From Auanema rhodensis (Eukaryota > Animalia > Nematoda), in NCBI GenBank assembly GCA_964057225.1, contig OZ059894.1:11470001-11534000 (forward strand): a DNA stretch of 64,000 bases, given 5' to 3'. The position numbers and the translations under genes are program-made. A model generated the notes under the pieces. The model was not told where the DNA came from, did no database searches, and saw nothing but the letters and a program-made list of their open reading frames with translations. This document shows, piece after piece, positions 1-50,240 of the stretch (positions are counted from its first letter, which is position 1; every line of letters starts with the position of its first letter).

Positions 1-1026
1 TCCTTGGTCAAATTTCTTCCAGTGCGAGTATCGAAGTCCATCAGCTCCTGGAGCCGTATCGCTGCAACGTCGTATGCGTTCCCAGACTTCCAAAGGGGTG
101 AAAACACCTTCTAATGGGTCGGTACTAGCTGGCAAATCCGGTCTGGTGACTGTGATGGGGAGGGCTGGGCCTTGACTGCTGTGAACAGAAAGGAAATGTT
201 TTTCAACCTCTGCAGATGGTATGGTGCAGGTTTCACTTTGTTCTCCGAGCAGTTGTCGAAAGGCTTTCTTCTTGTTGGCCCTCCAGAGCTTCTGGAGCTT
301 CATCGCCTGGGTTTTTTGGTCTTCCTCAGGTTGTGTGTGTGGTCGGCGCCTTTGTCGGAAGTTGGGAACTTTGATCATAATGTCAAGAGACTTTCTGATT
401 GCGTCTACCAACTCTTCCAGGACCTGCTCGAGCTCACTTTTGCACACAACCTTTTTAATTCTATCCACCCAAGTATTTTCAGAGTTTCTATTCGGATCAG
501 GGTCGGCAAAAAATGGTTCTGTACTCGAAACCCTGATCTCGTTGAATATTTCACTCTCTCGCGGAAGGGGGGAAACTTCGGCCTCTGGGGACAAGTCCAG
601 AATTGGGGCCTCAAACAAGCGTACCGTTGATGGAGATCCTTGTTCCTGTCCACTGGATGATGTTTCCTCCATTGTACGCTCCTCCACGGGCGGGGTGGTC
701 GTCCTTGTGCCTGGTGGCCGGGTGTTCCTGATCCTCCGCAATATAGGGCGGGAACTGGGCTCTCTCGGAGATAGAGGTGAGATCACCACAGTTTCCTCTA
801 TGATGCGGAGGCATCCTTCAGCTTTTTTCTGATGGCTTTTAACGGCCTTCAGATTGCTGGTGAGGCCACAGGCACGGCACTCAAATTCTACTCCGACCTC
901 ATGTTCTCTCCGAAGATGGCGGACGAGACCATTGTGGTCTGAGTAGGATCGCGGAATAGGAGCGCAGATTGAACAAGAAAAAGGGCTCTGAAGAGGCACC
1001 TTTAGCTTGTAAAGCCCTTGCTCCAT
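1..1026 (-). CDS. Partial retrotransposon ORF (N-terminal zinc fingers to start of RT)
   Basis: ATG at 1026; same sequence as the N-terminus of ORF 46910-50188; runs off the window. Confidence 0.9.
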   Translation of the reverse strand, partial: MEQGLYKLKVPLQSPFSCSICAPIPRSYSDHNGLVRHLRREHEVGVEFECRACGLTSNLKAVKSHQKKAEGCLRIIEETVVISPLSPREPSSRPILRRIRNTRPPGTRTTTPPVEERTMEETSSSGQEQGSPSTVRLFEAPILDLSPEAEVSPLPRESEIFNEIRVSSTEPFFADPDPNRNSENTWVDRIKKVVCKSELEQVLEELVDAIRKSLDIMIKVPNFRQRRRPHTQPEEDQKTQAMKLQKLWRANKKKAFRQLLGEQSETCTIPSAEVEKHFLSVHSSQGPALPITVTRPDLPASTDPLEGVFTPLEVWERIRRCSDTAPGADGLRYSHWKKFDQG

Positions 1027-1078
1027 CTCTAGCAGATCTAAAGACTTACGTAGTACAGTTGCAATATCGATTTAGCCA
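1..1078 (-). mobile_element. Utopia-type non-LTR retrotransposon, 5' part (cut by window edge), variant beta
   Basis: Nearly identical to 49163-50240; flanked by U2 nt 39-96 at 1079-1136. Confidence 0.93.
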
Positions 1079-1136
1079 TTAACCTTATTGTGAACCAATG
1101 GAACACATATCGAAGGTTAATTCGATAAGAACGATT
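1079..1136 (-). pseudogene. U2 snRNA fragment nt 39-96 between stacked elements
   Basis: 58 bp identical to U2 nt 39-96. Confidence 0.9.
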
Positions 1137-1924
1137 TATTGAAGTAGATAATGTTTGTCCCGGAGGACTACAATATTAAAATAATTACTGAAGCCCGAAG
1201 GCAGCGAGAAATAGTAAGGATACTACCTGCACTGAGTGCGTCGTATCATAAAAAAAGAGATAGCTAATGGGCAAGTTGAAGAGCTTGAAATTAACAATGA
1301 CGTCACTAGAAGTAAAGTTTTCTATCTGCAGCTGCGGGTAAAGAGGGTCAGCGTAAGCAGAATTCAATTCTACCAACAATTAGTGGGAACATTGAGAGAA
1401 CAGATGAAGGAGGAAATTGTAACTTCAAGTAAAATAGATTATATCTTCAGCTGCGGGTAAAGAGAGTCAGCTTTGTACAGATTACTAGTTTACATAAGAA
1501 GTGGTAACATTTCAAAAAAGGAGCACAACATAAAAAACGAGACTACGGACTATGAGGTAAATGTTATCATTGTCTGGATCGATGATTCGGCATTTGATTG
1601 CAGCTGCGGATTGAGTGGATCAGCTTGCATGGCGTCCGCATTCGACATCAGGGAAAATGATGAGTTTCTTGAGGTCCGGCTCGGCGGGCTGTTATGTCCT
1701 ATTCCCTGTTGATGGTGTTGTTGTCCTTGAGCTTGTTCTTCTTCCCAGAAAAAAAAAAACTGTGAAGCTGAAGAGTCCTATTAAACGTCTTTAAACGCAA
1801 GATTAATAAGAAGCTACTACAGCTAACACAGGACCGCCTCAAGGCCTGGTAGATCAACCAGTGTTGCTTCAATCACCAAGTATTGCGGCCTGGGCCCTTG
1901 GATCAATTCACAACACCAGTATAG
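1137..1924 (-). mobile_element. Non-autonomous U2-targeted retroelement A (788 bp, SINE-like)
   Basis: Same U2 insertion site as Utopia; ends in TTCAATAA; no RT ORF; shares 5' and 3' blocks with 34392-35256. Confidence 0.85.
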
Positions 1925-2003
1925 CAATGGAACACATATCGAAGGTTAATTCGATAAGAACGATTACTACACTTTGATCTTAGCCAAAAGGCCGAGAAGC
2001 GAT
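1925..2003 (-). pseudogene. Interrupted U2 snRNA, nt 1-79
   Basis: U2 match stops at nt 79 and continues into element A. Confidence 0.9.
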
Positions 2004-4036: not shown

Positions 4037-4279
4037 AAAGACATGAATAAACATAAATGTAAATACAGAATTACCAGGTAGTACATAAGTATGACAAAAA
4101 ATTATAAGAAAGCCATGAAAATAGAAGGTTTGTGAACAAATGAGAGGTACATCTTTGATCGTATAGTCATTTCTAAACCGTTCGTATGCTGCAGCATCGT
4201 CATAAGCGTCACTCAAGTTGAATTTCCATGTGTACTACACGATTTTCATTCTTATTGTTACATTCTTTCCCTGAGGGAA

Positions 4280-4463
4280 TGGGCCGTTCCCGCCAGCAGT
4301 GCAAGAGCGGGTCGACCCGTGAGGTGGAGCTAGCAAGCCAGCATCTACCTCAAGTCTCAAAAATCGGTTAACCTTATTGTGAACCAATGGAACACATATC
4401 GAAGGTTAATTCGATAAGAACGATTACTACACTTTGATCTTAGCCAAAAGGCCGAGAAGCGAT
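4280..4463 (-). ncRNA. U2 snRNA
   Basis: ATCGCTTCTCGGCCTTTTGGCTAAGATCAAAGTGTAGTA, stems IIa/IIb, Sm site ATTTTTG, loop IV TTGCACT. Confidence 0.96.
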
Positions 4464-9378: not shown

Positions 9379-12300
9379 AATGGTTTATTGAATAACTAAT
9401 GTTATGAAACAATAAATAACCAATAAAAAAGAGCCCAGAATCGGGGAGACGGTATTACCAGTACAACTTAAAACAGCAAGTGATTAAAAAGTACAAAATA
9501 AAACACATTACCAACAGAGGCTAAAACGACTCAAGAGTCGGGGGAGTGGGTTAAAAAAAGTAATGAATAACAAAAAAAATGAATAATAAAGCAGAACAGT
9601 GAAAAGTAAATATCAAGTGCCGCTATGATCAAACAATTTGAGTGCCTACGGCAATGGTGTTAAAAATAAACAACAAAATACATGTACCAATGAAGGTCAG
9701 AAAGAGAGAAAGAAAAAAGACAAAAATAAGTAATACAAAAAGTAAAAAATATATTACAATCAAATCACAAACAAGTCAATGGATAATTTCTTCTTCATAC
9801 TGCCTTACACCAGAAACATGTTCCACGTAGATATTCCTGGCCCACTTGATGGTATCGGCGACGACGAGCTTCTCCATTAGCCGGTTGTAGTGGCTGCTGA
9901 TCTTGAGTGATCGGAGGGCTTGTACGTTGAGCGGGTCCATAGTTCCAAGCATTCCTACGACATACGCTTCTACACTAGTCTTATAACCAAGACATTGGTA
10001 TTGGCTGGCTATGTCAGCATATTTCCTCTCCTTTATCATACGCGCGGCTATCATGGCTTGTCGGCGGTTTTCATAGCTCACTGTAACATCAACGATACTA
10101 CAGTGTTTTGCGTCATGATCGACCACTACTATGTCAGGTCGGAGTGTACTATTAATGCCAGGAAGAGGCTGGTTAGTGTAAACTTCTCCGTTTTTAGGCT
10201 CTGGCAGGGCTTTGATAAGACGGTCCACGATGTTGTTGTGGCGGAGTTGGATTGCTCTCGTGTGAAAGTGGCAGTGTCCAAGAACATGTGCAGCAGTTTC
10301 GTTGGGGTAACTACACCTGCGGCACTGTTTGTTTCCTTCTCCGTGTCTTCTACAGCCATTGAGCTGGAGAGTATTAAGTCGAGCCTTGTGGATGAATCGC
10401 CAATCAGCAAACCGTATGAAATCTCCCTTCGCCATAAAGTGATTGGACGCTTTGTTGAGCATTGTGACATCAAAGACTTTCCCTTGATCCGGTTTTTGAA
10501 GAAGGATCCGAAGGTCTTTCAGCCATAATGCACGTCGCAGGCTTCTGTGGCATAGTGAAGGTGTTAACAGTTGGTTGTTTAGATTGAGTTCTAAACCACT
10601 TTCGAGGCATGTCCAGTTAGCGTTGATGAGTTTCTTGAGTTGACGCATCGCTACTCTTACTCTAGTCCAGATGGAGGAAACATCAGATGTTTCGGTGTCG
10701 AAAATGCCATCAACGGAACCGTTGTAATATGCAGCTGTCTCATCGTTACTGGCTTGACGTTTAATCCTTTTTGATGCTACTTTTATTGAGTCTTGATGCG
10801 CAATATCAGCTACTACAAGATCAGATGACTTCAAAAGTTGGTAGGCATGAGTGACTTCACAGACGTCTGACAGGTGTTGGAGTCGAGAGAGACCAAGTCC
10901 GCCGTAGTTGGTTGGCAGGTAGATTGGTTCAGCACTGGCGTTTGGAGGATAGTGCATCCATCTACGGGCACAGCGTTTGAGTTCTTTGTCAAAGGCGACT
11001 AGTTTACTCTTTGGGACGTGGCCATTCGTCATATGAAAATTAAGGCAGGGCATCAGGAAGGTGCGTACTGCGTCAGCTTTCTGCCATTCAGCCAGTAAGG
11101 ATTTGTCAATTTTTTCCAAGTGTTGACTCATGATATTCACTGTTGGAACCGCAGACTTATGTAAATGCATTCCAGTAGGGATTCCCAGGTGGGAGTAGCT
11201 GTCAAATTTGCTGAGAGCGGGTAGAAAGCAGCTCTGAAGCATGTATGAGGCTGTTGATATTTTCCCTTTGTCGATCGTCAAAGTGGCGCATTTCGCTGGT
11301 TTGAAGGTCAAGCCTGTGAAATTAGCCGCATTTGATGCTGCGTCCAACATTTTCTGTAGATCTTCTGATGATGAGGAGACCAGGGCAAGGTCATCGGCGT
11401 ACGCTAGCACAGCGATGTTGTGATTGTGTAGCTTATAGCCTGTAGAGGTTTCCAAGATGGTTTTAATTAGAGGTTCAATGGCAAGGTTGAACAGGATCGG
11501 AGATAGTGGGGATCCTTGTAACACACCTGCGTGAACTGGAATGGTCGAAGTGAGTCCGGAGCCTGTCTGGATTCTTGTAGAGGCATCTGTGTATAGAGCT
11601 CGTACTCGGGATATTGAGGCTTCAGCCATTCCTGACCATCTTAGAACGTCTAGCAGAGTTTCGTGTGGCAGCGATCCAAAAGCGTTTGCGAGATCAAGCC
11701 AAGCAATTGCAATTTTCTCACGTTTACGTTTAGCGTCTGCAATGGTACTTTGCAACAAAAAGTTGTGTTCCATGCATCCAGCTTTGGCCACAAAGCCCTT
11801 TTGGGAGGGAGAAAGTCTTTTTTCTGCTCTTGCCCATGTTAGCAGTCGATGCGTAAGACAAGCTGAGTACGTCTTACCAATTGTGCACGAAAGTGCTATT
11901 GGTCGCCAGTTGTTAATGTCAGCTTTATCACCTTTCTTATGGATGAGGACGGTGGTCGACTCTTTCCAGGAAAAAGGGATGTGTCCTAGCTTGTGTACGG
12001 TGTTAAATATCGCTGCTAATATGTGACCTCCTTGGTCAAATTTCTTCCAGTGCGAGTATCGAAGTCCATCAGCTCCTGGAGCCGTATCGCTGCAACGTCG
12101 TATGCGTTCCCAGACTTCCAAAGGGGTGAAAACACCTTCTAATGGGTCGGTACTAGTTGGCAAATCCGGTCTGGTGACTGTGATGGGGAGGGCTGGGCCT
12201 TGACTGCTGTGAACAGAAAGGAAGTGTTTTTCAACATCTGCAGATGGTATGGTGCAGGTTTCACTTTGTTCTCCGAGCAGTTGTCGAAAGGCTTTCTTCT

Positions 12301-13106
12301 TGTTGGCCCTCCAAAGCTTCTGGATCTTCATCGCCTGGGTTTTTTGGTCTTCCTCAGGTTGTGTGTGTGGTCGGCGCCTTTGTCGGAAGTTGGGAACTTT
12401 GATCATAATGTCAAGAGACTTTCTGATTGTGTCTACCAACTCTTCCAGGACCTGCTCGAGCTCACTTTTGCATACTACCTTTTTAATTCTATCCACCCAA
12501 ATATTTTCAGAGTTTCTATTCGGATCAGGGTCGGCAAAAGATGGTTCTGTACTCGGAACCCTGATCTCGTTGAATATTTCACTCTCTCGCGGAAGGGGGG
12601 AAACTTCGGCCTCTGGGGACAAGTCCAGAATTGGGGCCTCAAACAAGCGTACCGTTGATGGAGATCCTTGTTCCTGTCCACTGGATGATGTTTCCTCCAT
12701 TGTACGCTCCTCCACGGGCGGGGTGGTCGTCCTTGTGCCTGGTGGGCGGGTGTTCCTGATCCTCCGCAATATAGGGCGGGAACTGGGCTCTCTCGGAGAT
12801 AGAGGTGAGATCACCACAGTTTCCTCTATGATGCGGAGGCATCCTTCAGCTTTTTTCTGATGGCTTTTAACGGCCTTCAGATTGCTGGTGAGGCCACAGG
12901 CACGGCACTCAAATTCTACTCCGACCTCATGTTCTCTCCGAAGATGGCGGACGAGACCATTGTGGTCTGAGTAGGATCGCGGAATAGGAGCGCAGATTGA
13001 ACAAGAAAAAGGGCTCTGAAGAGGCACCTTTAGCTTGTAAAGCCCTTGCTCCATCTCTAGCAGATCTAAAGACTTACGTAGTACAGTTGCAATATCGATT
13101 TAGCCA
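9379..13106 (-). mobile_element. Full-length Utopia-type (U2-targeting, RLE) non-LTR retrotransposon, variant alpha, 3728 bp
   Basis: Single RT-RLE ORF inserted in U2 in the same orientation; 52-nt unique 5' UTR; about 400-nt U-rich 3' UTR ending AATAAACCATT. Confidence 0.94.
9776..13054 (-). CDS. Retrotransposon protein: zinc fingers + reverse transcriptase + CCHC knuckle + restriction-like endonuclease (1092 aa)
   Basis: C2H2 finger CSIC...HLRREH; RT motifs APGADG, NWRPIAL, LDLANAF, QGSPLSP, YADD, GGLGL; CRRC...ETAAHVLGHC; RHN; RPDIV...VDV...KERKY. Confidence 0.97.
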   Translation of the reverse strand: MEQGLYKLKVPLQSPFSCSICAPIPRSYSDHNGLVRHLRREHEVGVEFECRACGLTSNLKAVKSHQKKAEGCLRIIEETVVISPLSPREPSSRPILRRIRNTRPPGTRTTTPPVEERTMEETSSSGQEQGSPSTVRLFEAPILDLSPEAEVSPLPRESEIFNEIRVPSTEPSFADPDPNRNSENIWVDRIKKVVCKSELEQVLEELVDTIRKSLDIMIKVPNFRQRRRPHTQPEEDQKTQAMKIQKLWRANKKKAFRQLLGEQSETCTIPSADVEKHFLSVHSSQGPALPITVTRPDLPTSTDPLEGVFTPLEVWERIRRCSDTAPGADGLRYSHWKKFDQGGHILAAIFNTVHKLGHIPFSWKESTTVLIHKKGDKADINNWRPIALSCTIGKTYSACLTHRLLTWARAEKRLSPSQKGFVAKAGCMEHNFLLQSTIADAKRKREKIAIAWLDLANAFGSLPHETLLDVLRWSGMAEASISRVRALYTDASTRIQTGSGLTSTIPVHAGVLQGSPLSPILFNLAIEPLIKTILETSTGYKLHNHNIAVLAYADDLALVSSSSEDLQKMLDAASNAANFTGLTFKPAKCATLTIDKGKISTASYMLQSCFLPALSKFDSYSHLGIPTGMHLHKSAVPTVNIMSQHLEKIDKSLLAEWQKADAVRTFLMPCLNFHMTNGHVPKSKLVAFDKELKRCARRWMHYPPNASAEPIYLPTNYGGLGLSRLQHLSDVCEVTHAYQLLKSSDLVVADIAHQDSIKVASKRIKRQASNDETAAYYNGSVDGIFDTETSDVSSIWTRVRVAMRQLKKLINANWTCLESGLELNLNNQLLTPSLCHRSLRRALWLKDLRILLQKPDQGKVFDVTMLNKASNHFMAKGDFIRFADWRFIHKARLNTLQLNGCRRHGEGNKQCRRCSYPNETAAHVLGHCHFHTRAIQLRHNNIVDRLIKALPEPKNGEVYTNQPLPGINSTLRPDIVVVDHDAKHCSIVDVTVSYENRRQAMIAARMIKERKYADIASQYQCLGYKTSVEAYVVGMLGTMDPLNVQALRSLKISSHYNRLMEKLVVADTIKWARNIYVEHVSGVRQYEEEIIH

Positions 13107-33063: not shown

Positions 33064-34245
33064 ACAGTAAAAAGTCCAATCAAGAGAGAAATTTTTTCAA
33101 CACATAGTTTTTTTTTTTTTAAATATCATTGTTTTTCCTCATAACTCGGTTTAAACTCGTTCTAACCCGTTGAAATACGTCTAGAAAGTCTTTATAACAT
33201 GCATATGTATGATAGAACTTCATATTTATTGTAATAGAAAATTTTATTTTCAGACGTCTTGGTTAACAATGATATGTTTTACCCCCTTATAATTTTTATC
33301 ATAATGTTCCTTATACGGAACGCTCAATGAAACTTGCTTCCAGAAAAATTTCTTTCTATTTTTTCTTCATATGTACGTAGATACTATAGAGAACTATGAT
33401 AGAAAACTTTAACATTCACGAAATCATCATTTCTCATTACGCTACGGAGGTTTAAAAAGCTGTGTTTTACCTTATAATAGACCGGAAAACCCTTGTGTTA
33501 AAACTGGACCGTTTTTACACATATAAAAATGTCCCGTATTCGGGACCCTAATGTAACTTTTGATTCCCTATATTTTTTTTCATGAAATTTACAATCTACT
33601 GTAGAAAGAAGAATTATTTTTATAAAAACTGTAAATTTTTGAAAAATGAAAACAAAACGAAAACAAAAACAACTTTTTTTTGAACATTTTCTCACACAAG
33701 GGTCCCCCCTTACCTACTTTTTTTCTCATTACTCGTTTCAACCTCATCCGATCACTCTGCAAACATGTTTAATCGTTCTAACTTGTTGAAATACGTCTTA
33801 AAAGTCTAAACAACATGCATATGCATAATAGAAACCACCCGAATAGGCCCCCACGCACTAAACGAGATATATACATTACCAGTATAGTAATAGAACACAT
33901 ATTGAAGATTAATTCGATAAGAACAATTTATTGACGTAGAGAATGTTTGTTCCGAAAAACTACAATATTAAACTATAAAAGTAACAAAAGCGTAGAGGCA
34001 GCAAAGACATGAATAAACATAAATGTAAATACAGAATTACCAGGTAGTACATAAGTATGACAAAAAATTATAAGAAAGCCATGAAAATAGAAGGTTTGTG
34101 AACAAATGAGAGGTACATCTTTGATCGTATAGTCATTTCTAAACCGTTCGTATGCTGCAGCATCGTCATAAGCGTCACTCAAGTTGAATTTCCATGTGTA
34201 CTACACGATTTTCATTCTTATTGTTACATTCTTTCCCTGAGGGAA

Positions 34246-34391
34246 TGGGCCGTTCCCGCCAGCAGTGCAAGAGCGGGTCGACCCGTGAGGTGGAGCTAGC
34301 AAGCCAGCATCTACCTCAAGTCTCAAAAATCGGTTAACCTTATTGTGAACCAATGGAACACATATCGAAGGTTAATTCGATAAGAACGATT
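34246..34391 (-). pseudogene. Interrupted U2 snRNA, nt 39-184
   Basis: U2 3' part after the element B 3' end. Confidence 0.92.
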
Positions 34392-35256
34392 TATTGAAGT
34401 AGGAAATGTTTTGCCCCGTAGGACTACAAGTAAATATTATCTAGCACAAGGCTATTAGAGAATGATAAGATACTACCTGCACTAAGTGCGTCGCATCGTA
34501 AAGGGAAAAAAAATTAAACAATGGGAGTTTAACAGCATGAAATTGAGAGAAAAGACATATCCGAGTGTGAATAAAATTACGGGTGAACGGAACATGGAGT
34601 ACGAGAGACATACAAAACGAGACTAAGTGAAAAGAAAAAGTCTTGTATCACGTTCATGAAGGTTCGACGGATCCGGTAAGAAGCTGCGGGTTCAGAAGGT
34701 CAGCTTTCATCTCGTAGTCGTGGCGCATCAGGAATTTGTGAAGCTTTCCGGCTTTGCAGACGGCTGTATTGGTCCTCGTAGGATGGTGGAAGATGTTGTC
34801 GCTTAGTGATGTTACACATAAAGATATGCAAAAATAGAACAATTCAAAGAAAAAGAGCACAATTAAAACGAGATTTGGAGAGAAGAGAAGTCTTATATCA
34901 CTTTCGATGGTTCGGAAGCTCCAGTCTGCTGCTGCGGTTTAGGGGGTGCAACTGGCATGTCGGAGGCGTAGCACATCATAGGTCAAGCTTGCTGGACTCC
35001 CGGCTCGGCTGGTGGCTGTGAGTTTTCCTTGTGCTTGTTCTCGGTGGTGGTCCCTGGGCTGTCTCTTCACCAAAAATTACTATACTAATTGCACATTTCA
35101 TTTAAACGACCCATTTCAGAAGCTTTAAGAGGAAAAGCTACAATTAGCATAGGACCGCCTCAAGGCCTGGTGGATCATTCAATTTAGTTTCAATCGCCAA
35201 GTATAGCGGCCTGGGCCCTTGGGTCAATTCACTGAACCAGTGTAGTATCGATTGTT
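34392..35256 (-). mobile_element. Non-autonomous U2-targeted retroelement B (865 bp, SINE-like)
   Basis: Same U2 site; U2 nt 39-79 present on both sides; terminal blocks homologous to element A; no RT ORF. Confidence 0.87.
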
Positions 35257-35335
35257 CAATGGAACACATATCGAAGGTTAATTCGATAAGAACGATTACT
35301 ACACTTTGATCTTAGCCAAAAGGCCGAGAAGCGAT
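35257..35335 (-). pseudogene. Interrupted U2 snRNA, nt 1-79
   Basis: U2 match stops at nt 79. Confidence 0.92.
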
Positions 35336-42744: not shown

Positions 42745-45700
42745 AATGGTTTATTGAATAACTAATGTTATGAAACAATAAATAACCAATAAAAAAGAGC
42801 CCAGAATCGGGGAGACGGTATTACCAGTACAACTTAAAACAGCAAGTGATTAAAAAGTACAAAATAAAACACATTACCAACAGAGGCTAAAACGACTCAA
42901 GAGTCGGGGGAGTGGGTTAAAAAAAGTAATGAATAACAAAAAAAATGAATAATAAAGCAGAACAGTGAAAAGTAAATATCAAGTGCCGCTATGATCAAAC
43001 AATTTGAGTGCCTACGGCAATGGTGTTAAAAATAAACAACAAAATACATGTACCAATGAAGGTCAGAAAGAGAGAAAGAAAAAAGACAAAAATAAGTAAT
43101 ACAAAAAGTAAAAAATATATTACAATCAAATCACAAACAAGTCAATGGATAATTTCTTCTTCATACTGCCTTACACCAGAAACATGTTCCACGTAGATAT
43201 TCCTGGCCCACTTGATGGTATCGGCGACGACGAGCTTCTCCATTAGCCGGTTGTAGTGGCTGCTGATCTTGAGTGATCGGAGGGCTTGTACGTTGAGCGG
43301 GTCCATAGTTCCAAGCATTCCTACGACATACGCTTCTACACTAGTCTTATAACCAAGACATTGGTATTGGCTGGCTATGTCAGCATATTTCCTCTCCTTT
43401 ATCATACGCGCGGCTATCATGGCTTGTCGGCGGTTTTCATAGCTCACTGTAACATCAACGATACTACAGTGTTTTGCGTCATGATCGACCACTACTATGT
43501 CAGGTCGGAGTGTACTATTAATGCCAGGAAGAGGCTGGTTAGTGTAAACTTCTCCGTTTTTAGGCTCTGGCAGGGCTTTGATAAGACGGTCCACGATGTT
43601 GTTGTGGCGGAGTTGGATTGCTCTCGTGTGAAAGTGGCAGTGTCCAAGAACATGTGCAGCAGTTTCGTTGGGGTAACTACACCTGCGGCACTGTTTGTTT
43701 CCTTCTCCGTGTCTTCTACAGCCATTGAGCTGGAGAGTATTAAGTCGAGCCTTGTGGATGAATCGCCAATCAGCAAACCGTATGAAATCTCCCTTCGCCA
43801 TAAAGTGATTGGACGCTTTGTTGAGCATTGTGACATCAAAGACTTTCCCTTGATCCGGTTTTTGAAGAAGGATCCGAAGGTCTTTCAGCCATAATGCACG
43901 TCGCAGGCTTCTGTGGCATAGTGAAGGTGTTAACAGTTGGTTGTTTAGATTGAGTTCTAAACCACTTTCGAGGCATGTCCAGTTAGCGTTGATGAGTTTC
44001 TTGAGTTGACGCATCGCTACTCTTACTCTAGTCCAGATGGAGGAAACATCAGATGTTTCGGTGTCGAAAATGCCATCAACGGAACCGTTGTAATATGCAG
44101 CTGTCTCATCGTTACTGGCTTGACGTTTAATCCTTTTTGATGCTACTTTTATTGAGTCTTGATGCGCAATATCAGCTACTACAAGATCAGATGACTTCAA
44201 AAGTTGGTAGGCATGAGTGACTTCACAGACGTCTGACAGGTGTTGGAGTCGAGAGAGACCAAGTCCGCCGTAGTTAGTTGGCAGGTAGATTGGTTCAGCA
44301 CTGGCGTTTGGAGGATAGTGCATCCATCTACGGGCACAGCGTTTGAGTTCTTTGTCAAAGGCGACTAGTTTACTCTTTGGGACGTGGCCATTCGTCATAT
44401 GAAAATTAAGGCAGGGCATCAGGAAGGTGCGTACTGCGTCAGCTTTCTGCCATTCAGCCAGTAAGGATTTGTCAATTTTTTCCAAGTGTTGACTCATGAT
44501 ATTCACTGTTGGAACCGCAGACTTATGTAAATGCATTCCAGTAGGGATTCCCAGGTGGGAGTAGCTGTCAAATTTGCTGAGAGCGGGTAGAAAGCAGCTC
44601 TGAAGCATGTATGAGGCTGTTGATATTTTCCCTTTGTCGATCGTCAAAGTGGCGCATTTCGCTGGTTTGAAGGTCAAGCCTGTGAAATTAGCCGCATTTG
44701 ATGCTGCGTCCAACATTTTCTGTAGATCTTCTGATGATGAGGAGACCAGGGCAAGGTCATCGGCGTACGCTAGCACAGCGATGTTGTGATTGTGTAGCTT
44801 ATAGCCTGTAGAGGTTTCCAAGATGGTTTTAATTAGAGGTTCAATGGCAAGGTTGAACAGGATCGGAGATAGTGGGGATCCTTGTAACACACCTGCGTGA
44901 ACTGGAATGGTCGAAGTGAGTCCGGAGCCTGTCTGGATTCTTGTAGAGGCATCTGTGTATAGAGCTCGTACTCGGGATATTGAGGCTTCAGCCATTCCTG
45001 ACCATCTTAGAACGTCTAGCAGAGTTTCGTGTGGCAGCGATCCAAAAGCGTTTGCGAGATCAAGCCAAGCAATTGCAATTTTCTCACGTTTACGTTTAGC
45101 GTCTGCAATGGTACTTTGCAACAAAAAGTTGTGTTCCATGCATCCAGCTTTGGCCACAAAGCCCTTTTGGGAGGGAGAAAGTCTTTTTTCTGCTCTTGCC
45201 CATGTTAGCAGTCGATGCGTAAGACAAGCTGAGTACGTCTTACCAATTGTGCACGAAAGTGCTATTGGTCGCCAGTTGTTAATGTCAGCTTTATCACCTT
45301 TCTTATGGATGAGGACGGTGGTCGACTCTTTCCAGGAAAAAGGGATGTGTCCTAGCTTGTGTACGGTGTTAAATATCGCTGCTAATATGTGACCTCCTTG
45401 GTCAAATTTCTTCCAGTGCGAGTATCGAAGTCCATCAGCTCCTGGAGCCGTATCGCTGCAACGTCGTATGCGTTCCCAGACTTCCAAAGGGGTGAAAACA
45501 CCTTCTAATGGGTCGGTACTAGTTGGCAAATCCGGTCTGGTGACTGTGATGGGGAGGGCTGGGCCTTGACTGCTGTGAACAGAAAGGAAGTGTTTTTCAA
45601 CATCTGCAGATGGTATGGTGCAGGTTTCACTTTGTTCTCCGAGCAGTTGTCGAAAGGCTTTCTTCTTGTTGGCCCTCCAAAGCTTCTGGATCTTCATCGC

Positions 45701-46472
45701 CTGGGTTTTTTGGTCTTCCTCAGGTTGTGTGTGTGGTCGGCGCCTTTGTCGGAAGTTGGGAACTTTGATCATAATGTCAAGAGACTTTCTGATTGTGTCT
45801 ACCAACTCTTCCAGGACCTGCTCGAGCTCACTTTTGCACACTACCTTTTTAATTCTATCCACCCAAATATTTTCAGAGTTTCTATTCGGATCAGGGTCGG
45901 CAAAAGATGGTTCTGTACTCGGAACCCTGATCTCGTTGAATATTTCACTCTCTCGCGGAAGGGGGGAAACTTCGGCCTCTGGGGACAAGTCCAGAATTGG
46001 GGCCTCAAACAAGCGTACCGTTGATGGAGATCCTTGTTCCTGTCCACTGGATGATGTTTCCTCCATTGTACGCTCCTCCACGGGCGGGGTGGTCGTCCTT
46101 GTGCCTGGTGGGCGGGTGTTCCTGATCCTCCGCAATATAGGGCGGGAACTGGGCTCTCTCGGAGATAGAGGTGAGATCACCACAGTTTCCTCTATGATGC
46201 GGAGGCATCCTTCAGCTTTTTTCTGATGGCTTTTAACGGCCTTCAGATTGCTGGTGAGGCCACAGGCACGGCACTCAAATTCTACTCCGACCTCATGTTC
46301 TCTCCGAAGATGGCGGACGAGACCATTGTGGTCTGAGTAGGATCGCGGAATAGGAGCGCAGATTGAACAAGAAAAAGGGCTCTGAAGAGGCACCTTTAGC
46401 TTGTAAAGCCCTTGCTCCATCTCTAGCAGATCTAAAGACTTACGTAGTACAGTTGCAATATCGATTTAGCCA
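42745..46472 (-). mobile_element. Full-length Utopia-type retrotransposon, variant alpha, 3728 bp
   Basis: Almost identical to 9379-13106. Confidence 0.94.
43142..46420 (-). CDS. Zinc finger-RT-RLE retrotransposon protein (1092 aa)
   Basis: Same protein as 9776-13054. Confidence 0.97.
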   Translation of the reverse strand: MEQGLYKLKVPLQSPFSCSICAPIPRSYSDHNGLVRHLRREHEVGVEFECRACGLTSNLKAVKSHQKKAEGCLRIIEETVVISPLSPREPSSRPILRRIRNTRPPGTRTTTPPVEERTMEETSSSGQEQGSPSTVRLFEAPILDLSPEAEVSPLPRESEIFNEIRVPSTEPSFADPDPNRNSENIWVDRIKKVVCKSELEQVLEELVDTIRKSLDIMIKVPNFRQRRRPHTQPEEDQKTQAMKIQKLWRANKKKAFRQLLGEQSETCTIPSADVEKHFLSVHSSQGPALPITVTRPDLPTSTDPLEGVFTPLEVWERIRRCSDTAPGADGLRYSHWKKFDQGGHILAAIFNTVHKLGHIPFSWKESTTVLIHKKGDKADINNWRPIALSCTIGKTYSACLTHRLLTWARAEKRLSPSQKGFVAKAGCMEHNFLLQSTIADAKRKREKIAIAWLDLANAFGSLPHETLLDVLRWSGMAEASISRVRALYTDASTRIQTGSGLTSTIPVHAGVLQGSPLSPILFNLAIEPLIKTILETSTGYKLHNHNIAVLAYADDLALVSSSSEDLQKMLDAASNAANFTGLTFKPAKCATLTIDKGKISTASYMLQSCFLPALSKFDSYSHLGIPTGMHLHKSAVPTVNIMSQHLEKIDKSLLAEWQKADAVRTFLMPCLNFHMTNGHVPKSKLVAFDKELKRCARRWMHYPPNASAEPIYLPTNYGGLGLSRLQHLSDVCEVTHAYQLLKSSDLVVADIAHQDSIKVASKRIKRQASNDETAAYYNGSVDGIFDTETSDVSSIWTRVRVAMRQLKKLINANWTCLESGLELNLNNQLLTPSLCHRSLRRALWLKDLRILLQKPDQGKVFDVTMLNKASNHFMAKGDFIRFADWRFIHKARLNTLQLNGCRRHGEGNKQCRRCSYPNETAAHVLGHCHFHTRAIQLRHNNIVDRLIKALPEPKNGEVYTNQPLPGINSTLRPDIVVVDHDAKHCSIVDVTVSYENRRQAMIAARMIKERKYADIASQYQCLGYKTSVEAYVVGMLGTMDPLNVQALRSLKISSHYNRLMEKLVVADTIKWARNIYVEHVSGVRQYEEEIIH

Positions 46473-46530
46473 TTAACCTTATTGTGAACCAATGGAACAC
46501 ATATCGAAGGTTAATTCGATAAGAACGATT
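46473..46530 (-). pseudogene. U2 fragment nt 39-96 between two stacked retrotransposons
   Basis: 58 bp identical to U2. Confidence 0.92.
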
Positions 46531-49500
46531 AATGGTTTATTGAATAACTAATGTTATGATACAATAAATAACCAATAAAAAAGAGCCCAGAATCGGGGAG
46601 ACGGTATTACCAGTACAACTTAAAACAGCAAGTAATTAAAAAGTACATAATAAGACACATTGCCAACAGAGGCTAAAACGACTCAAGAGTCGGGGGAGTG
46701 GGTTAAAAAAAATGAACAAAAAAATGAATATTAAAGCAGAACAATGAGAAATCAAGTGCCGCTATGATCAAACAATTTGAGTGCCTACGGCAATGATGTT
46801 AAAAATAAACAACAAAATACATGTACCAATGAAGGTCAGAAAGAAAGAAACAAAAGACAAAAATAAGTAATACAAAAAGTAAATACATTACAATCAAATC
46901 ACAAACAAGTCAATTGATAATTTCTTCTTCATATTGCCTTACACCAGAAACATGTTCCACGTAGATATTCCTGGCCCACTTGATGGTATCGGCGACGACG
47001 AGCTTCTCCATTAGCCGGTTGTAGTGGCTGCTGATCTTGAGTGATCGGAGGGCTTGTCCGTTGAGCGGGTCCATAGTTCCAAGCATTCCTACGACATATG
47101 CTTCTACACTAGTCTTATAACCAAGACATTGGTATTGGCTGGCTATGTCAGCATATTTCCTCTCCTTTATCATACGCGCGGCTATCATGGCTTGACGGCG
47201 GTTTTCATAGCTCACTGTAACATCAACGATACTACAGTGTTTTGCGTCATGATCGACCACTACTATGTCAGGTCGGAGTGTACTATTAATGCCAGGAAGA
47301 GGCTGGTTAGTGTAAACTTCTCCGTTTTTAGGCTCTGGCAGGGCTTTGATAAGACGGTCCACGATGTTGTTGTGGCGGAGTTGGATTGCTCTCGTGTGAG
47401 AGTGGCAGTGTCCAAGAACATGTGCAGCAGTTTCGTTGGAGTAACTACACCTGCGGCACTGTTTGTTTCCTTCTCCGTGTCTTCTACAGCCATTGAGCTG
47501 GAGAGTATTGAGTCGAGCCTTGTGGATGAATCGCCAATCAGCAAACCGTATGAAATCTCCCTTCGCCATAAAGTGATTGGACGCTTTGTTGAGCATTGTG
47601 ACATCAAAGACTTTCCCTTGATCCGGTTTTTGAAGAAGGATCCGAAGGTCTTTCAGCCATAATGCACGTCGCAGGCTTCTGTGGCATAGTGAAGGTGTTA
47701 ACAGTTGGTTGTTTAGATTGAGTTCTAAACCACTTTCGAGGCATGTCCAGTTAGCGTTGATGAGTTTCTTGAGTTGACGCATCGCTACTCTTACTCTAGT
47801 CCAGATGGAGGAAACATCAGATGTTTCGGTGTCGAAAATGCCATCAACGGAACCGTTGTAATATGCAGCTGTCTCATCGTTACTGGCTTGACGTTTAATC
47901 CTTTTTGATGCTACTTTTTTTGAGTCTTGATGCGCAATATCAGCTACTACAAGATCAGATGACTTCAAAAGTTGGTAGGCATGAGTGACTTCACAGACGT
48001 CTGACAGGTGTTGGAGTCGAGAGAGACCAAGTCCGCCGTAGTTAGTTGGCAGGTAGATTGGTTCAGCACTGGCGTTTGGAGGATAGTGCATCCATCTACG
48101 GGCACAGCGTTTGAGTTCTTTGTCAAAGGCGACTAGTTTACTCTTTGGGACGTGGCCATTCGTCATATGAAAATTAAGGCAGGGCATCAGGAAGGTGCGT
48201 ACTGCGTCAGCTTTCTGCCATTCAGCAAGTAAGGATTTGTCAATTTTTTCCAAGTGTTGACTCATAATATTCACTGTTGGAACCGCAGACTTATGTAAAT
48301 GCATTCCAGTAGGGATTCCCAGGTGGGAGTAGCTGTCGAATTTGCTGAGAGCGGGTAGAGAGGAGCTCTGTAGCATGTATGAGGCTGTTGATATTTTCCC
48401 TTTGTCGATCGTCAAGGTGGCGCATTTCGCTGGTTTGAAGGTCAAGCCTGTGAAATTAGCCGCATTTGATGCTGCGTCCAACATTTTCTGTAGATCTTCT
48501 GATGATGAGGAGACCAGGGCAAGGTCATCGGCGTACGCTAGCACAGCGATGTTGTGGTTGTGTAGCTTATAGCCAGTAGAGGATTCCAAGATGGTTTTAA
48601 TTAGAGGTTCAATGGCAAGGTTGAACAGGATCGGAGATAGTGGGGATCCTTGTAACACACCTGCATGAACTGGAATGGTCGATGTGAGTCCGGAGCCTGT
48701 CTGGATTCTTGTAGAGGCATCTGTGTATAGAGCTCGTACTCGGGATATTGAGGCTTCAGCCACTCCTGACCATCTTAGAACGTCTAGCAGAGTTTCGTGT
48801 GGCAGCGATCCAAAAGCGTTTGCGAGATCAAGCCAAGCAATTGCAATTTTCTCACGTTTACGTTTAGCGTCCGCAATGGTACTTTGCAACATAAAGTTGT
48901 GTTCCATGCATCCAGCTTTGGCCACAAAGCCCTTTTGGGAGGGAGAAAGTCTTTTTTCTGCTCTTGCCCATGTTAGCAGTCGATGCGTAAGACAAGCTGA
49001 GTACGTCTTACCAATTGTGCACGAAAGTGCTATTGGTCGCCAGTTGTTAATGTCAGCTTTATCACCTTTCTTATGGATGAGGACGGTGGTCGACTCTTTC
49101 CAGGAAAAAGGGATGTGTCCTAGCTTGTGTACGGTGTTAAATATCGCTGCTAATATGTGACCTCCTTGGTCAAATTTCTTCCAGTGCGAGTATCGAAGTC
49201 CATCAGCTCCTGGAGCCGTATCGCTGCAACGTCGTATGCGTTCCCAGACTTCCAAAGGGGTGAAAACACCTTCTAATGGGTCGGTACTAGCTGGCAAATC
49301 CGGTCTGGTGACTGTGATGGGGAGGGCTGGGCCTTGACTGCTGTGAACAGAAAGGAAATGTTTTTCAACCTCTGCAGATGGTATGGTGCAGGTTTCACTT
49401 TGTTCTCCGAGCAGTTGTCGAAAGGCTTTCTTCTTGTTGGCCCTCCAGAGCTTCTGGAGCTTCATCGCCTGGGTTTTTTGGTCTTCCTCAGGTTGTGTGT

Positions 49501-50240
49501 GTGGTCGGCGCCTTTGTCGGAAGTTGGGAACTTTGATCATAATGTCAAGAGACTTTCTGATTGCGTCTACCAACTCTTCCAGGACCTGCTCGAGCTCACT
49601 TTTGCACACAACCTTTTTAATTCTATCCACCCAAGTATTTTCAGAGTTTCTATTCGGATCAGGGTCGGCAAAAAATGGTTCTGTACTCGAAACCCTGATC
49701 TCGTTGAATATTTCACTCTCTCGCGGAAGGGGGGAAACTTCGGCCTCTGGGGACAAGTCCAGAATTGGGGCCTCAAACAAGCGTACCGTTGATGGAGATC
49801 CTTGTTCCTGTCCACTGGATGATGTTTCCTCCATTGTACGCTCCTCCACGGGCGGGGTGGTCGTCCTTGTGCCTGGTGGGCGGGTGTTCCTGATCCTCCG
49901 CAATATAGGGCGGGAACTGGGCTCTCTCGGAGATAGAGGTGAGATCACCACAGTTTCCTCTATGATGCGGAGGCATCCTTCAGCTTTTTTCTGATGGCTT
50001 TTAACGGCCTTCAGATTGCTGGTGAGGCCACAGGCACGGCACTCAAATTCTACTCCGACCTCATGTTCTCTCCGAAGATGGCGGACGAGACCATTGTGGT
50101 CTGAGTAGGATCGCGGAATAGGAGCGCAGATTGAACAAGAAAAAGGGCTCTGAAGAGGCACCTTTAGCTTGTAAAGCCCTTGCTCCATCTCTAGCAGATC
50201 TAAAGACTTACGTAGTACAGTTGCAATATCGATTTAGCCA
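46531..50240 (-). mobile_element. Full-length Utopia-type retrotransposon, variant beta, 3710 bp
   Basis: Head-to-tail with the previous copy; 3' UTR indels and coding substitutions relative to alpha. Confidence 0.94.
46910..50188 (-). CDS. Zinc finger-RT-RLE retrotransposon protein (1092 aa)
   Basis: Intact YADD, CCHC and PD..D..K motifs; scattered substitutions versus alpha. Confidence 0.97.
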   Translation of the reverse strand: MEQGLYKLKVPLQSPFSCSICAPIPRSYSDHNGLVRHLRREHEVGVEFECRACGLTSNLKAVKSHQKKAEGCLRIIEETVVISPLSPREPSSRPILRRIRNTRPPGTRTTTPPVEERTMEETSSSGQEQGSPSTVRLFEAPILDLSPEAEVSPLPRESEIFNEIRVSSTEPFFADPDPNRNSENTWVDRIKKVVCKSELEQVLEELVDAIRKSLDIMIKVPNFRQRRRPHTQPEEDQKTQAMKLQKLWRANKKKAFRQLLGEQSETCTIPSAEVEKHFLSVHSSQGPALPITVTRPDLPASTDPLEGVFTPLEVWERIRRCSDTAPGADGLRYSHWKKFDQGGHILAAIFNTVHKLGHIPFSWKESTTVLIHKKGDKADINNWRPIALSCTIGKTYSACLTHRLLTWARAEKRLSPSQKGFVAKAGCMEHNFMLQSTIADAKRKREKIAIAWLDLANAFGSLPHETLLDVLRWSGVAEASISRVRALYTDASTRIQTGSGLTSTIPVHAGVLQGSPLSPILFNLAIEPLIKTILESSTGYKLHNHNIAVLAYADDLALVSSSSEDLQKMLDAASNAANFTGLTFKPAKCATLTIDKGKISTASYMLQSSSLPALSKFDSYSHLGIPTGMHLHKSAVPTVNIMSQHLEKIDKSLLAEWQKADAVRTFLMPCLNFHMTNGHVPKSKLVAFDKELKRCARRWMHYPPNASAEPIYLPTNYGGLGLSRLQHLSDVCEVTHAYQLLKSSDLVVADIAHQDSKKVASKRIKRQASNDETAAYYNGSVDGIFDTETSDVSSIWTRVRVAMRQLKKLINANWTCLESGLELNLNNQLLTPSLCHRSLRRALWLKDLRILLQKPDQGKVFDVTMLNKASNHFMAKGDFIRFADWRFIHKARLNTLQLNGCRRHGEGNKQCRRCSYSNETAAHVLGHCHSHTRAIQLRHNNIVDRLIKALPEPKNGEVYTNQPLPGINSTLRPDIVVVDHDAKHCSIVDVTVSYENRRQAMIAARMIKERKYADIASQYQCLGYKTSVEAYVVGMLGTMDPLNGQALRSLKISSHYNRLMEKLVVADTIKWARNIYVEHVSGVRQYEEEIIN

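What the first reader, a model, noticed from the sequence alone, without database searches (positions are those of the whole stretch)
34392..35256. Non-autonomous, U2-site-specific retroelement family (B here, A at 1137-1924) apparently riding on Utopia machinery
Seen: two inserts of 865 and 788 bp sit at the same U2 position and orientation as the RT-RLE element, with 3' junction ...CTTCAATA/AATCGTTC. Neither encodes an RT or endonuclease. They are strongly diverged internally but keep the same ordered blocks: a GC-rich 5' block, internal repeats and two 3' hairpins. They show no extended similarity to the local autonomous element, so they are not simple deletion derivatives of it. I see no tRNA- or 5S-derived head. 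Known: R2 has non-autonomous SIDE partners in rDNA, and Utopia targets U2. Inference: an old SINE-like lineage expressed from the host U2 promoter and inserted in trans by a Utopia protein, giving a host gene / parasite / hyperparasite system. I do not recall such Utopia partners being described.
Basis: partly seen in the sequence, partly recalled or inferred. Interest (0 to 1): 0.9.

Follow-up and report, generated by a model that had tools for sequence, protein, structure and literature searches.

The report
Non-coding rider elements in U2 genes
Short protein-less mobile elements sit only inside this roundworm's U2 snRNA genes, at the exact base used by the Utopia retrotransposon, and they share their last 80 bases with a second Utopia lineage, so they most likely borrow a Utopia enzyme and the U2 promoter, although fresh jumps have not been seen.

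Summary
B (34392-35256) and A (1137-1924) lie in U2 genes, in U2 orientation, as U2 nt 1-79 | element | U2 nt 39-190. Neither has an ORF, a tRNA head or a 5S head.

Genome-wide the family has 47 copies in four subfamilies: A 29, B 12, C 3, D 3. All are at this site in one 1.2-Mb U2/5S array and none is elsewhere. Both ends are conserved (72-91%); the middle is not (33-55%).

A second autonomous Utopia lineage lies 508 kb outside the window as a single copy with one in-frame stop. Its last ~80 nt match the A/C/D tails at 78-82%. Every array spacer carries an old relic of that tail.

The 41-bp U2 "duplication" is probably an inherited U2 leader from U2-promoter transcripts, not a staggered cut. 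The 5' block is complementary to U2 nt 1-41. Contigs from three public runs, apparently RNA, cover A and B.

The best reading is a SINE/SIDE-like partner of Utopia. Current mobility is unproven, and array turnover clearly amplified some copies. I found no published description. This scan has already flagged the same family on other windows of this genome.

The parts
34392..35256 (-). Element B, 865 nt, non-coding. 12 copies in the genome.
35136..35256 (-). B 5' block, the conserved first ~120 nt. It is complementary in segments to U2 nt 1-48.
   Evidence: Alignment. Duplex -35.4 kcal/mol against shuffles -24.8+-3.4. It is the best anti-U2 stretch of the element.
34392..34472 (-). B 3' tail: a hairpin with a UNCG-type loop, then AACATT-N7-TCAATA.
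35257..35335 (-). U2 nt 1-79 upstream of B, read here as the leader. The U2 promoter region beyond it differs at 1 of 440 positions from that of empty units.
34240..34391 (-). U2 nt 39-190 downstream of B.
33929..34146 (-). Relic in the unit spacer: 217 nt, 77-78% like the last 217 nt of the Utopia-2 3' UTR. It is present in every array unit.
33877..33928 (-). Relic U2 nt 39-78 (90% identical to U2), followed by ACTATACTGGTA, the first bases of an A-type element.
1137..1924 (-). Element A, 788 nt, non-coding. 29 copies in the genome.
1925..2003 (-). U2 nt 1-79 upstream of A.
1079..1136 (-). U2 nt 39-96 linker between A and the next Utopia-1 copy.
   Evidence: (L050)
1..1078 (-). 5' part of a Utopia-1 copy lying downstream of A. 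It runs off the window.
9379..13106 (-). Utopia-1, the autonomous RT element with an intact 1092-aa ORF at 9776-13054. It is flanked by U2 1-96 and U2 39-190.
42745..50240 (-). Two tandem Utopia-1 copies separated by U2 nt 39-96.

Best explanation
A and B belong to a four-subfamily (A-D), 740-865-nt family of non-autonomous retroelements that live only at nt 38|39 of U2 snRNA genes.

Proposed cycle:
1. (Inferred, with indirect support.) The occupied U2 gene is transcribed from its own Pol II snRNA promoter. The element RNA therefore begins at U2 +1 and carries U2 nt 1-79 as a leader.
2. (Predicted.) The conserved 5' block, which is antisense to U2 nt 1-41, pairs with that leader.
3. (Inferred from tail homology and shared site.) A Utopia RT/restriction-like-endonuclease protein supplied in trans nicks U2 DNA at nt 38|39. 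It starts target-primed reverse transcription at the element's 3' tail. The tail is a small hairpin plus AACAUU-N7-UCAAUA. It is shared at 78-82% with the Utopia-2 lineage, and as a terminal motif with Utopia-1.
4. (Inferred.) The full-length cDNA ends in anti-U2 sequence and anneals to the upstream half of the target. This gives an exact, inherited U2 39-79 pseudo-duplication and rebuilds an intact target upstream, which allows tandem and mixed stacks.

On top of this, unequal crossing-over in the array multiplies occupied units.
For: Site specificity:
- 47 of 47 5' motifs and 47 of 47 3' motifs in the 181-Mb genome lie in one array, all on one strand.
- Junctions are uniform.

Selection on the ends:
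- 5' ~100 columns are 83-91% identical and 3' ~100 columns 72-82%, against 33-55% in the middle.

Tail sharing:
- The last ~80 nt of A, C and D match autonomous Utopia-2 at E 1e-13 to 1e-16.
- The tail is native to that lineage, because a 217-nt relic in every unit carries it.
- The hairpin is kept in 6 of 6 tails.
- The motif AACATT-N6-7-TCAATA is also in Utopia-1.

Leader rather than staggered cut:
- Leader ends are lineage-specific: 79 for A-D, 89 for Utopia-2, 96 for Utopia-1. A-D match neither enzyme's supposed stagger.
- In stacks the linker always has the length of the downstream element's leader.
- A 168-nt 5'-truncated Utopia-1 copy sits between U2 1-39 and U2 39-96 with no duplication.
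- Other truncated copies have irregular junctions and target deletions.
- One Utopia-1 copy is joined exactly at U2 +1 to the nick-equivalent point of the relic.

Varied contexts: plain U2, upstream or downstream of Utopia-1, a B x4 tandem, and a B-A stack.

Transcription:
- Contigs of three small runs cover A and B (the B contig runs 30 nt into the U2 leader) and other subfamilies.
- The 70-copy Utopia-1 and the ~400-copy distal spacer are nearly absent. That pattern does not follow DNA copy number.

5' block: the duplex with U2 1-48 has z -3 to -4 against shuffles, and this block is by far the best anti-U2 region of each element.
Against: - No new insertion, polymorphism or 5'-truncated A-D copy was seen. 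Junctions are invariant, whereas R2 SIDE junctions vary.
- Copies within a subfamily are ~100% identical, but so is the whole array, so identity says nothing about recent jumps.
- 13 consecutive A-bearing units show DNA-level amplification.
- The tail-sharing partner Utopia-2 is a single copy with an in-frame stop.
- Homology of B's tail to Utopia-2 is weak: no blastn hit, 53% identity in the 125-nt tail alignment.
- The runs are only guessed to be RNA. They are contigs and carry no strand or end information.
- 3' tail folding energies are not better than shuffles.
- Stacks could also arise by unequal recombination in the 41-bp U2 linkers.
Confidence: 0.6

Rival explanations
1. Dead passengers. 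A-D were inserted long ago, but today they multiply and move only at the DNA level, by unequal crossing-over and gene conversion that homogenise the U2/5S array. No retrotransposition occurs now.
For: - There is a run of 13 consecutive A-bearing units, plus adjacent pairs and triplets.
- Array units are virtually identical.
- Junctions are invariant and there are no truncated A-D copies.
- The tail-sharing Utopia-2 is single-copy with a stop.
- Units holding a truncated Utopia-1 copy are themselves tandemly triplicated (L087, L088).
- Replication of degenerate R2 by rDNA turnover is documented (PMC4370867, listed; abstract only read).
Against: - Singletons of each subfamily are scattered over ~1.2 Mb in several different stack contexts.
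- The ends are conserved across subfamilies that differ by 30-47% overall, while the middles have drifted.
- A, B and further subfamilies appear in probable RNA contigs.
- 40 or more intact Utopia-1 ORFs are available as an enzyme source.
Confidence: 0.25
2. Plain internal-deletion derivatives (true SIDEs) of a third Utopia lineage that has the same 5' block and tail. That lineage would be extinct or unassembled in this genome.
For: - Internal-deletion derivatives do arise here. L090 is a Utopia-1 copy lacking nt 152-2031 with leader and tail intact.
- The 3' tail is clearly Utopia-derived.
- The assembly has N-runs inside the array, next to two copies.
Against: - No element in the 181-Mb assembly other than the 47 short copies carries the 5' motif or the upstream 3' motif within 2 mismatches.
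- There is no similarity to the 5' UTRs or proteins of Utopia-1 or Utopia-2.
- The A-D leader ends at nt 79, unlike either autonomous lineage.
Confidence: 0.1
3. Not a mobile element: a host-maintained variant U2 locus producing a chimeric U2-derived non-coding RNA, for example an antisense regulator of U2 or of Utopia.
For: - The 5' block is complementary to the functional 5' end of U2.
- The sequence appears to be transcribed.
- The ends are conserved.
Against: - The insertion point is exactly the Utopia nick site, and the tail is Utopia-derived.
- Multiple divergent subfamilies, tandem multimers and stacks with Utopia are typical of parasites.
- The inserts disrupt the U2 gene.
Confidence: 0.04

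Closest known systems
R2 SIDEs (short internally deleted elements) of Drosophila rDNA (Eickbush & Eickbush 2012, PMC3414825)
   Same: Both are short, protein-less, site-specific riders in a tandem multicopy RNA gene. Both are co-transcribed with the host gene, share the 3' end of an RLE-type autonomous element, and are presumed to be copied by its TPRT machinery.
   Different: SIDEs keep the R2 5' ribozyme and are recent deletion derivatives with variable 5' junctions. A-D share only ~80 nt of tail with an autonomous lineage, and no ribozyme was detected. Their 5' end is defined by the U2 transcription start plus a 79-nt U2 leader. Their junctions are invariant, and the host gene is a Pol II snRNA gene.
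LINE/SINE pairs with shared 3' tails (stringent-type recognition)
   Same: A non-coding element carries the 3' tail of a LINE lineage, and its body is unrelated to the LINE.
   Different: A-D have no Pol III head (tRNA, 7SL or 5S). They are not dispersed: every copy is at one nucleotide of one gene family. Transcription is borrowed from the target gene's promoter.
Utopia, the U2-specific RLE non-LTR retrotransposon (Kojima & Jurka 2015, PMC4640811)
   Same: The 3' junction is identical, with U2 resuming at nt 39. Orientation and tandem insertion are the same. A Pristionchus family (Utopia-1_PPac) is listed there.
   Different: Utopia encodes ZF-RT-ZF-RLE, whereas A-D encode nothing. The paper describes no non-autonomous partner and interprets flanking repeats as staggered-cut TSDs.
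SINEU, crocodilian SINEs with U1/U2-derived heads (Kojima 2015, PMC4494074)
   Same: A non-autonomous retroposon whose 5' end is snRNA sequence, probably acquired by template switching.
   Different: SINEU copies are dispersed or target a Mariner, and they depend on Tx1-type APE elements. Here the U2 head is continuous with the live host gene and rebuilds the target.

Membership tests
Utopia (autonomous) | ORF with RT and C-terminal zinc finger / restriction-like endonuclease | tested here: not met
   A-D have no ORF longer than 79 aa and no tblastn match. The window's 1092-aa ORF has RVT_1.
Utopia (autonomous) | 3' end abuts U2 resuming at nt 39, in the same orientation as U2 | tested here: met
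   site as stated in PMC4640811
SIDE-type non-autonomous derivative | 3' end homologous to the 3' UTR of an autonomous element at the same site | tested here: met
   The last ~80 nt of A, C and D are 78-82% identical to Utopia-2 (E 1e-13 to 1e-16). B is weaker: 53% in the 125-nt tail alignment.
SIDE-type non-autonomous derivative | 5' end (ribozyme / 5' UTR) of the autonomous element retained | tested here: not met
   There is no similarity beyond chance to the Utopia-1 or Utopia-2 5' UTRs, and no ribozyme family at E<=10.
SIDE-type non-autonomous derivative | Variable 5' junctions or truncations indicating independent TPRT events | tested here: not met
   There are only two 5' junction types, one per lineage, and no truncated copy.
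SINE | Pol III-type head (tRNA, 7SL, 5S) | tested here: not met
   ARAGORN found none and Rfam found none.
SINE | LINE-derived 3' tail | tested here: met
Any non-autonomous retroelement | Mobilisation in trans by the partner's RT | not testable with these tools
   This needs an in vitro TPRT assay or observation of new insertions.
Any non-autonomous retroelement | Transcribed | tested here: inconclusive
   Contigs from three runs of one study cover A and B in a pattern that does not follow DNA copy number. The runs are only guessed to be RNA, and there is no strand or end information.

The most novel reading that the evidence does not exclude
The conserved 5' block is an evolved antisense-U2 module. 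By pairing with U2 nt 1-41 it could hold the RNA's 5' end, and so the finished cDNA end, at the upstream half of the cleaved U2 gene. The partner strand could be the element's own U2 leader or the displaced sense strand of the target gene. This would give RNA-guided, scar-free 5' joining that rebuilds the target, and it would also keep the chimeric U2 head out of the spliceosome. Under this reading, any RNA embedded between a U2 leader and U2 nt 39 onward could be copied. The riders would then depend on target homology more than on a specific protein-RNA tail contact.
Probability: 0.2. Interest if true: 0.8.

Novelty: new variant of a known kind. Interest (0 to 1): 0.58.

Why it matters
Non-autonomous partners are known for R2 in rDNA but, as far as I could find, not for Utopia or for any snRNA-gene-specific retrotransposon.

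This locus offers a compact three-level system:
- about 400 U2 target sites;
- about 70 mostly intact Utopia-1 copies;
- one decaying Utopia-2 copy;
- 47 riders in four old lineages.

The ends needed for propagation are marked out by conservation. The locus makes several questions testable:
- how RLE elements recognise RNA tails across lineages;
- how precise 5' junctions are made (inherited host-gene leader versus staggered cut);
- how parasites and their riders persist in a homogenising gene array.

The idea itself follows precedents from R2/SIDE and LINE/SINE pairs, so it extends known biology and does not overturn it.

Tried and rejected
- Ribozyme or other known RNA at the 5' block: Rfam at E<=10 gave only noise.
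- tRNA head: none.
- Hidden coding capacity: no long ORFs, no tblastn hits, and A-B conservation is equal in all frames.
- Deletion derivative of Utopia-1 or Utopia-2: no 5' or body similarity.
- Copies outside U2: none.
- Flank haplotypes to separate independent insertions from unit duplication: the units are too uniform to tell.
- Thermodynamic support for the 3' hairpins: z only -0.8 to -1.6 for A and B, and +0.3 for Utopia-2.
- Anti-U2 tract in the Utopia-1 leader, from an earlier scan note: not significant in my crude duplex test (z -0.7). Utopia-2 does carry a perfect 10-mer antisense to U2 nt 1-10.
- Cross-species search: the best protein relatives (55-56% identity) are on short metagenome contigs without U2 flanks. 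Metagenome pattern scans gave nothing or chance 19-25-nt hits in GC-rich contigs.
- L012's "truncated" B and the copy in L075 simply abut N-runs.
- The Utopia-2 ORF was searched as two pieces on either side of its stop and was not read through.

Full report
WHAT IS THERE

The window is part of a tandem array of units holding one U2 snRNA gene and one or two 5S rRNA genes, all on the minus strand (Rfam). It corresponds to G000:C1:11470001-11534000 of a 181-Mb, 112-contig eukaryotic assembly. Earlier scan notes call the organism a roundworm. The best named protein relatives include nematodes and a scorpion.

An intact U2 is 190 nt (window 4274-4463). B (34392-35256) and A (1137-1924) both lie in U2 orientation as U2 nt 1-79 | element | U2 nt 39 onward. 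The 3' junction is ...CTTCAATA|AATCGTTC.

The window's autonomous element, here called Utopia-1, spans 9379-13106. Its intact 1092-aa ORF has an RVT_1 domain. It resumes U2 at the same nt 39, but its upstream U2 flank runs to nt 96. A sits directly upstream of another Utopia-1 copy, separated from it by U2 39-96.

OBSERVATION CHECK

All the descriptive claims hold.
- There are no ORFs above 79 aa.
- There is no similarity to Utopia proteins, and the conservation is not frame-specific.
- There is no tRNA and no Rfam family.
- A and B are 83% identical over the first ~108 nt and 74% over the last ~155 nt, and are otherwise barely alignable.
- Internal repeats exist.
- There is a GC-rich stretch at element nt ~170-360.
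- There is no significant blastn match to Utopia-1.

FAMILY CENSUS

Searches of the whole genome with A and B found two further subfamilies, C (783 nt) and D (742 nt).

Exact-motif scans give 47 copies of a 5' motif and 47 copies of a 3' motif. All are on the minus strand of C1 between 10.91 and 12.10 Mb, and none is elsewhere. De-duplicated, the counts are A 29, B 12, C 3 and D 3.

Junctions are uniform. There are two 5' junction types, both after U2 nt 79, and every assessable copy is followed by U2 nt 39. Two B copies abut N-runs, and one A copy is a chimera (described below).

Contexts differ:
- plain U2 (34 copies);
- upstream of Utopia-1 with a U2 39-96 linker;
- downstream of Utopia-1 with a U2 39-79 linker;
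- four B copies in tandem separated by U2 39-79;
- a Utopia-1 / B / A stack.

The array holds 399 uninterrupted target sites, 70 Utopia-1 3' junctions and 48 A-type 3' junctions. Utopia-1 ORFs are mostly intact and 98-100% identical.

Across subfamilies the ends are conserved: the 5' ~100 alignment columns at 83-91% and the 3' ~100 columns at 72-82%. The middle is at 33-55%.

THE MISSED PARTNER

Listing every junction of the form "not-T + AATCG..." turned up three that do not belong to A-D. One of them (L074/L076, C1:10961685-10965621) is a second autonomous element, here called Utopia-2.
- It is 3.9 kb and colinear with Utopia-1.
- Its protein is 48-59% identical to the Utopia-1 protein.
- Its ORF is split by one in-frame stop into 820 and 273 aa. 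I searched the two pieces separately.
- It is the only full copy in the assembly.
- Its upstream U2 flank ends at nt 89.

Its last ~80 nt match the tails of A, C and D at 78-82% (E 1e-13 to 1e-16). B's tail is more diverged, at 53% in a 125-nt alignment. The similarity stops abruptly upstream of the tail.

The tail is native to the Utopia-2 lineage. Every array unit carries, about 95 nt downstream of U2, a 217-nt relic that is 77-78% identical to the end of the Utopia-2 3' UTR. The relic is followed by a degenerate U2 39-78 and then by the first ~11 nt of an A-type element. Both the autonomous lineage and an A-type rider with the same nt-79 boundary therefore predate the present array unit.

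In the tail, the hairpin UGU.GUCC[UNCG]GGAC..ACA is kept in all six sequences, with one compensatory and three wobble changes. Single-sequence energies are unremarkable. The terminal module (stem)TT-N6-7-TCAATA is also recognisable in Utopia-1, which adds AACCATT after it.

LEADER OR STAGGERED CUT

The U2 repeat flanking full-length copies is lineage-specific. It ends at nt 79 for A-D, 89 for Utopia-2 and 96 for Utopia-1. If the repeat were a target-site duplication set by the enzyme, A-D would match neither enzyme.

Four further observations bear on this:
- In stacks the linker always has the length belonging to the downstream element. Utopia-1 copies lying upstream of B or A still have a clean U2 1-96 flank.
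- A 168-nt 5'-truncated Utopia-1 copy (L067) lies between U2 1-39 and U2 39-96 with no duplication. It ends in ...TTCAATA like A-D.
- Other truncated Utopia-1 copies have irregular 5' junctions with target deletions.
- In L010 a Utopia-1 leader beginning at U2 nt 1 is fused to the nick-equivalent point of the upstream relic.

Together these fit RNA templates that start at the U2 transcription start. Their cDNA end then anneals to the upstream half of the target, as proposed for R2 when 28S sequence remains on the RNA (title and abstract of PMC3774820, and my own knowledge). The evidence is indirect and comes mainly from Utopia-1. For A-D it rests on the invariant nt-79 boundary across lineages that differ by 30-47% and in the relic. 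Earlier scan notes reached the same leader model for Utopia-1.

5' BLOCK

When the first ~120 nt are folded together with U2 1-79, the predicted structure pairs U2 nt 1-8, 11-15 and 24-41 with the element. The duplex energy with U2 1-48 is -35 to -37 kcal/mol. Dinucleotide shuffles give -25 +/- 3 (0-4 of 300 reach it), and other parts of the same elements give -12 to -29. B's extra 11 nt at its 5' end extend the match to U2 nt 29-48.

The block looks like two degenerate antisense copies of the U2 5' end. What the pairing does is unknown. I did not reproduce a significant signal for the Utopia-1 leader. Utopia-2 has a perfect antisense 10-mer to U2 1-10.

TRANSCRIPTION

One study has four small runs (~20 Mb of contigs each), whose kind is only guessed to be RNA; three of them hold half or more of the sampled words of A and B. 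Laid on L011, contigs cover three regions: A; B (running 30 nt into the upstream U2); and the U2 3' part with 225 nt of downstream spacer. Two further contigs share only A/B-type ends and have other middles, so they represent other subfamilies.

The 70-copy Utopia-1 and the distal spacer, present about 400 times in DNA, are almost uncovered. That pattern does not follow DNA copy number, so the runs probably show transcripts. They carry no strand, start or end information, and the tool warns against ranking by depth.

LITERATURE

Kojima & Jurka 2015 define Utopia, give nt 39 as the downstream boundary, list a Pristionchus family and report tandem insertions. The paper does not contain the words non-autonomous or nonautonomous.

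The closest precedents are R2 SIDEs (PMC3414825), LINE/SINE tail sharing, and snRNA-headed SINEU (PMC4494074). Full-text searches for non-autonomous snRNA-gene-specific retroelements found nothing relevant. Repbase and Dfam could not be consulted.

VERDICT

There is one important correction: the riders share their tail with a second Utopia lineage that the window does not contain.

I put 0.6 on a trans-mobilised, U2-promoter-driven non-autonomous family that is active now or was recently. I put 0.25 on the same family now spreading only by array turnover. Smaller odds go to plain deletion derivatives of an unseen lineage and to a host RNA gene.

It is a new variant of a known kind. The scan has already reported this family from several other windows of the same genome, so the new content here is:
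- the Utopia-2 tail link;
- the relic's identity;
- the four-subfamily census with contexts;
- the truncated-copy evidence on the leader.

Noticed in passing
L061-L065 (G000:C8:6.98-10.33 Mb): On another contig there are small U2(/5S) loci. In them a full U2 is followed by up to 15 tandem monomers of about 163 bp, each made of U2 nt 39-190 plus a ~12-nt trailer that matches the U2 3' flank. Every monomer starts exactly at the Utopia nick site. This looks like repeated retro-copying of 3'-extended pre-U2 RNA into the nick, or a U2-derived satellite.
   Followed up: partly
L067 (G000:C1:12096700-12098900), locus 287-492: A 168-nt 5'-truncated Utopia-1 copy sits between U2 1-39 and U2 39-96 with no U2 duplication. 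Its 3' end stops at ...TTCAATA, lacking the usual AACCATT, exactly like the riders and Utopia-2.
   Followed up: yes
L010 (G000:C1:11202123-11205986), locus ~1035-1045: The relic tail ...GTCAAT is fused directly to U2 nt 1-96 plus Utopia-1, with about 1.5 kb lost (5S genes and U2 promoter). Both breakpoints fall at special points: the relic's nick-equivalent site and U2 +1.
   Followed up: partly
L059 (G000:C1:11336991-11340737), locus 1332-2247: A chimera of A nt 1-749 joined, with an 8-nt overlap, to the last 177 nt of the Utopia-1 3' UTR. It arose either by a tail swap through template switching or by a 3.6-kb deletion. There is a single copy. An earlier scan note covers it.
   Followed up: partly
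L090 (G000:C1:11424650-11426950): An internally deleted Utopia-1 copy (nt 152-2031 missing) with an intact U2 1-96 leader and tail. This is a SIDE-like derivative of the resident element.
   Followed up: no
L084-L089 (G000:C1:11.02-11.36 Mb): 5'-truncated Utopia-1 copies have irregular upstream junctions and 1.7-2.4-kb target deletions that remove the 5S genes. One such unit is tandemly triplicated, which shows DNA-level amplification of occupied units.
   Followed up: partly
G000:C1:11227114-11302991: Several Utopia-1 junctions and U2 sites lie on the plus strand, so a segment of the array is inverted.
   Followed up: no
window 34386-34395 and 9385-9390: A canonical AATAAA is formed across the rider/U2 junction (CAATA|AATCG), and one lies inside the Utopia-1 terminus (TTCAATAAACC). 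It could be a polyadenylation signal that leaves a short U2 39+ tag on the RNA.
   Followed up: no
window, whole: Array units carry either one or two 5S genes (unit lengths ~2.1 and ~2.47 kb). Utopia-1 3' UTRs come in two variants that differ by about 7% and in length.
   Followed up: no
L058 (G000:C1:11918299-11919086): One A copy (99% identical to A) carries the C-type variant of the upstream 3' motif, which suggests recombination or conversion between subfamilies.
   Followed up: no
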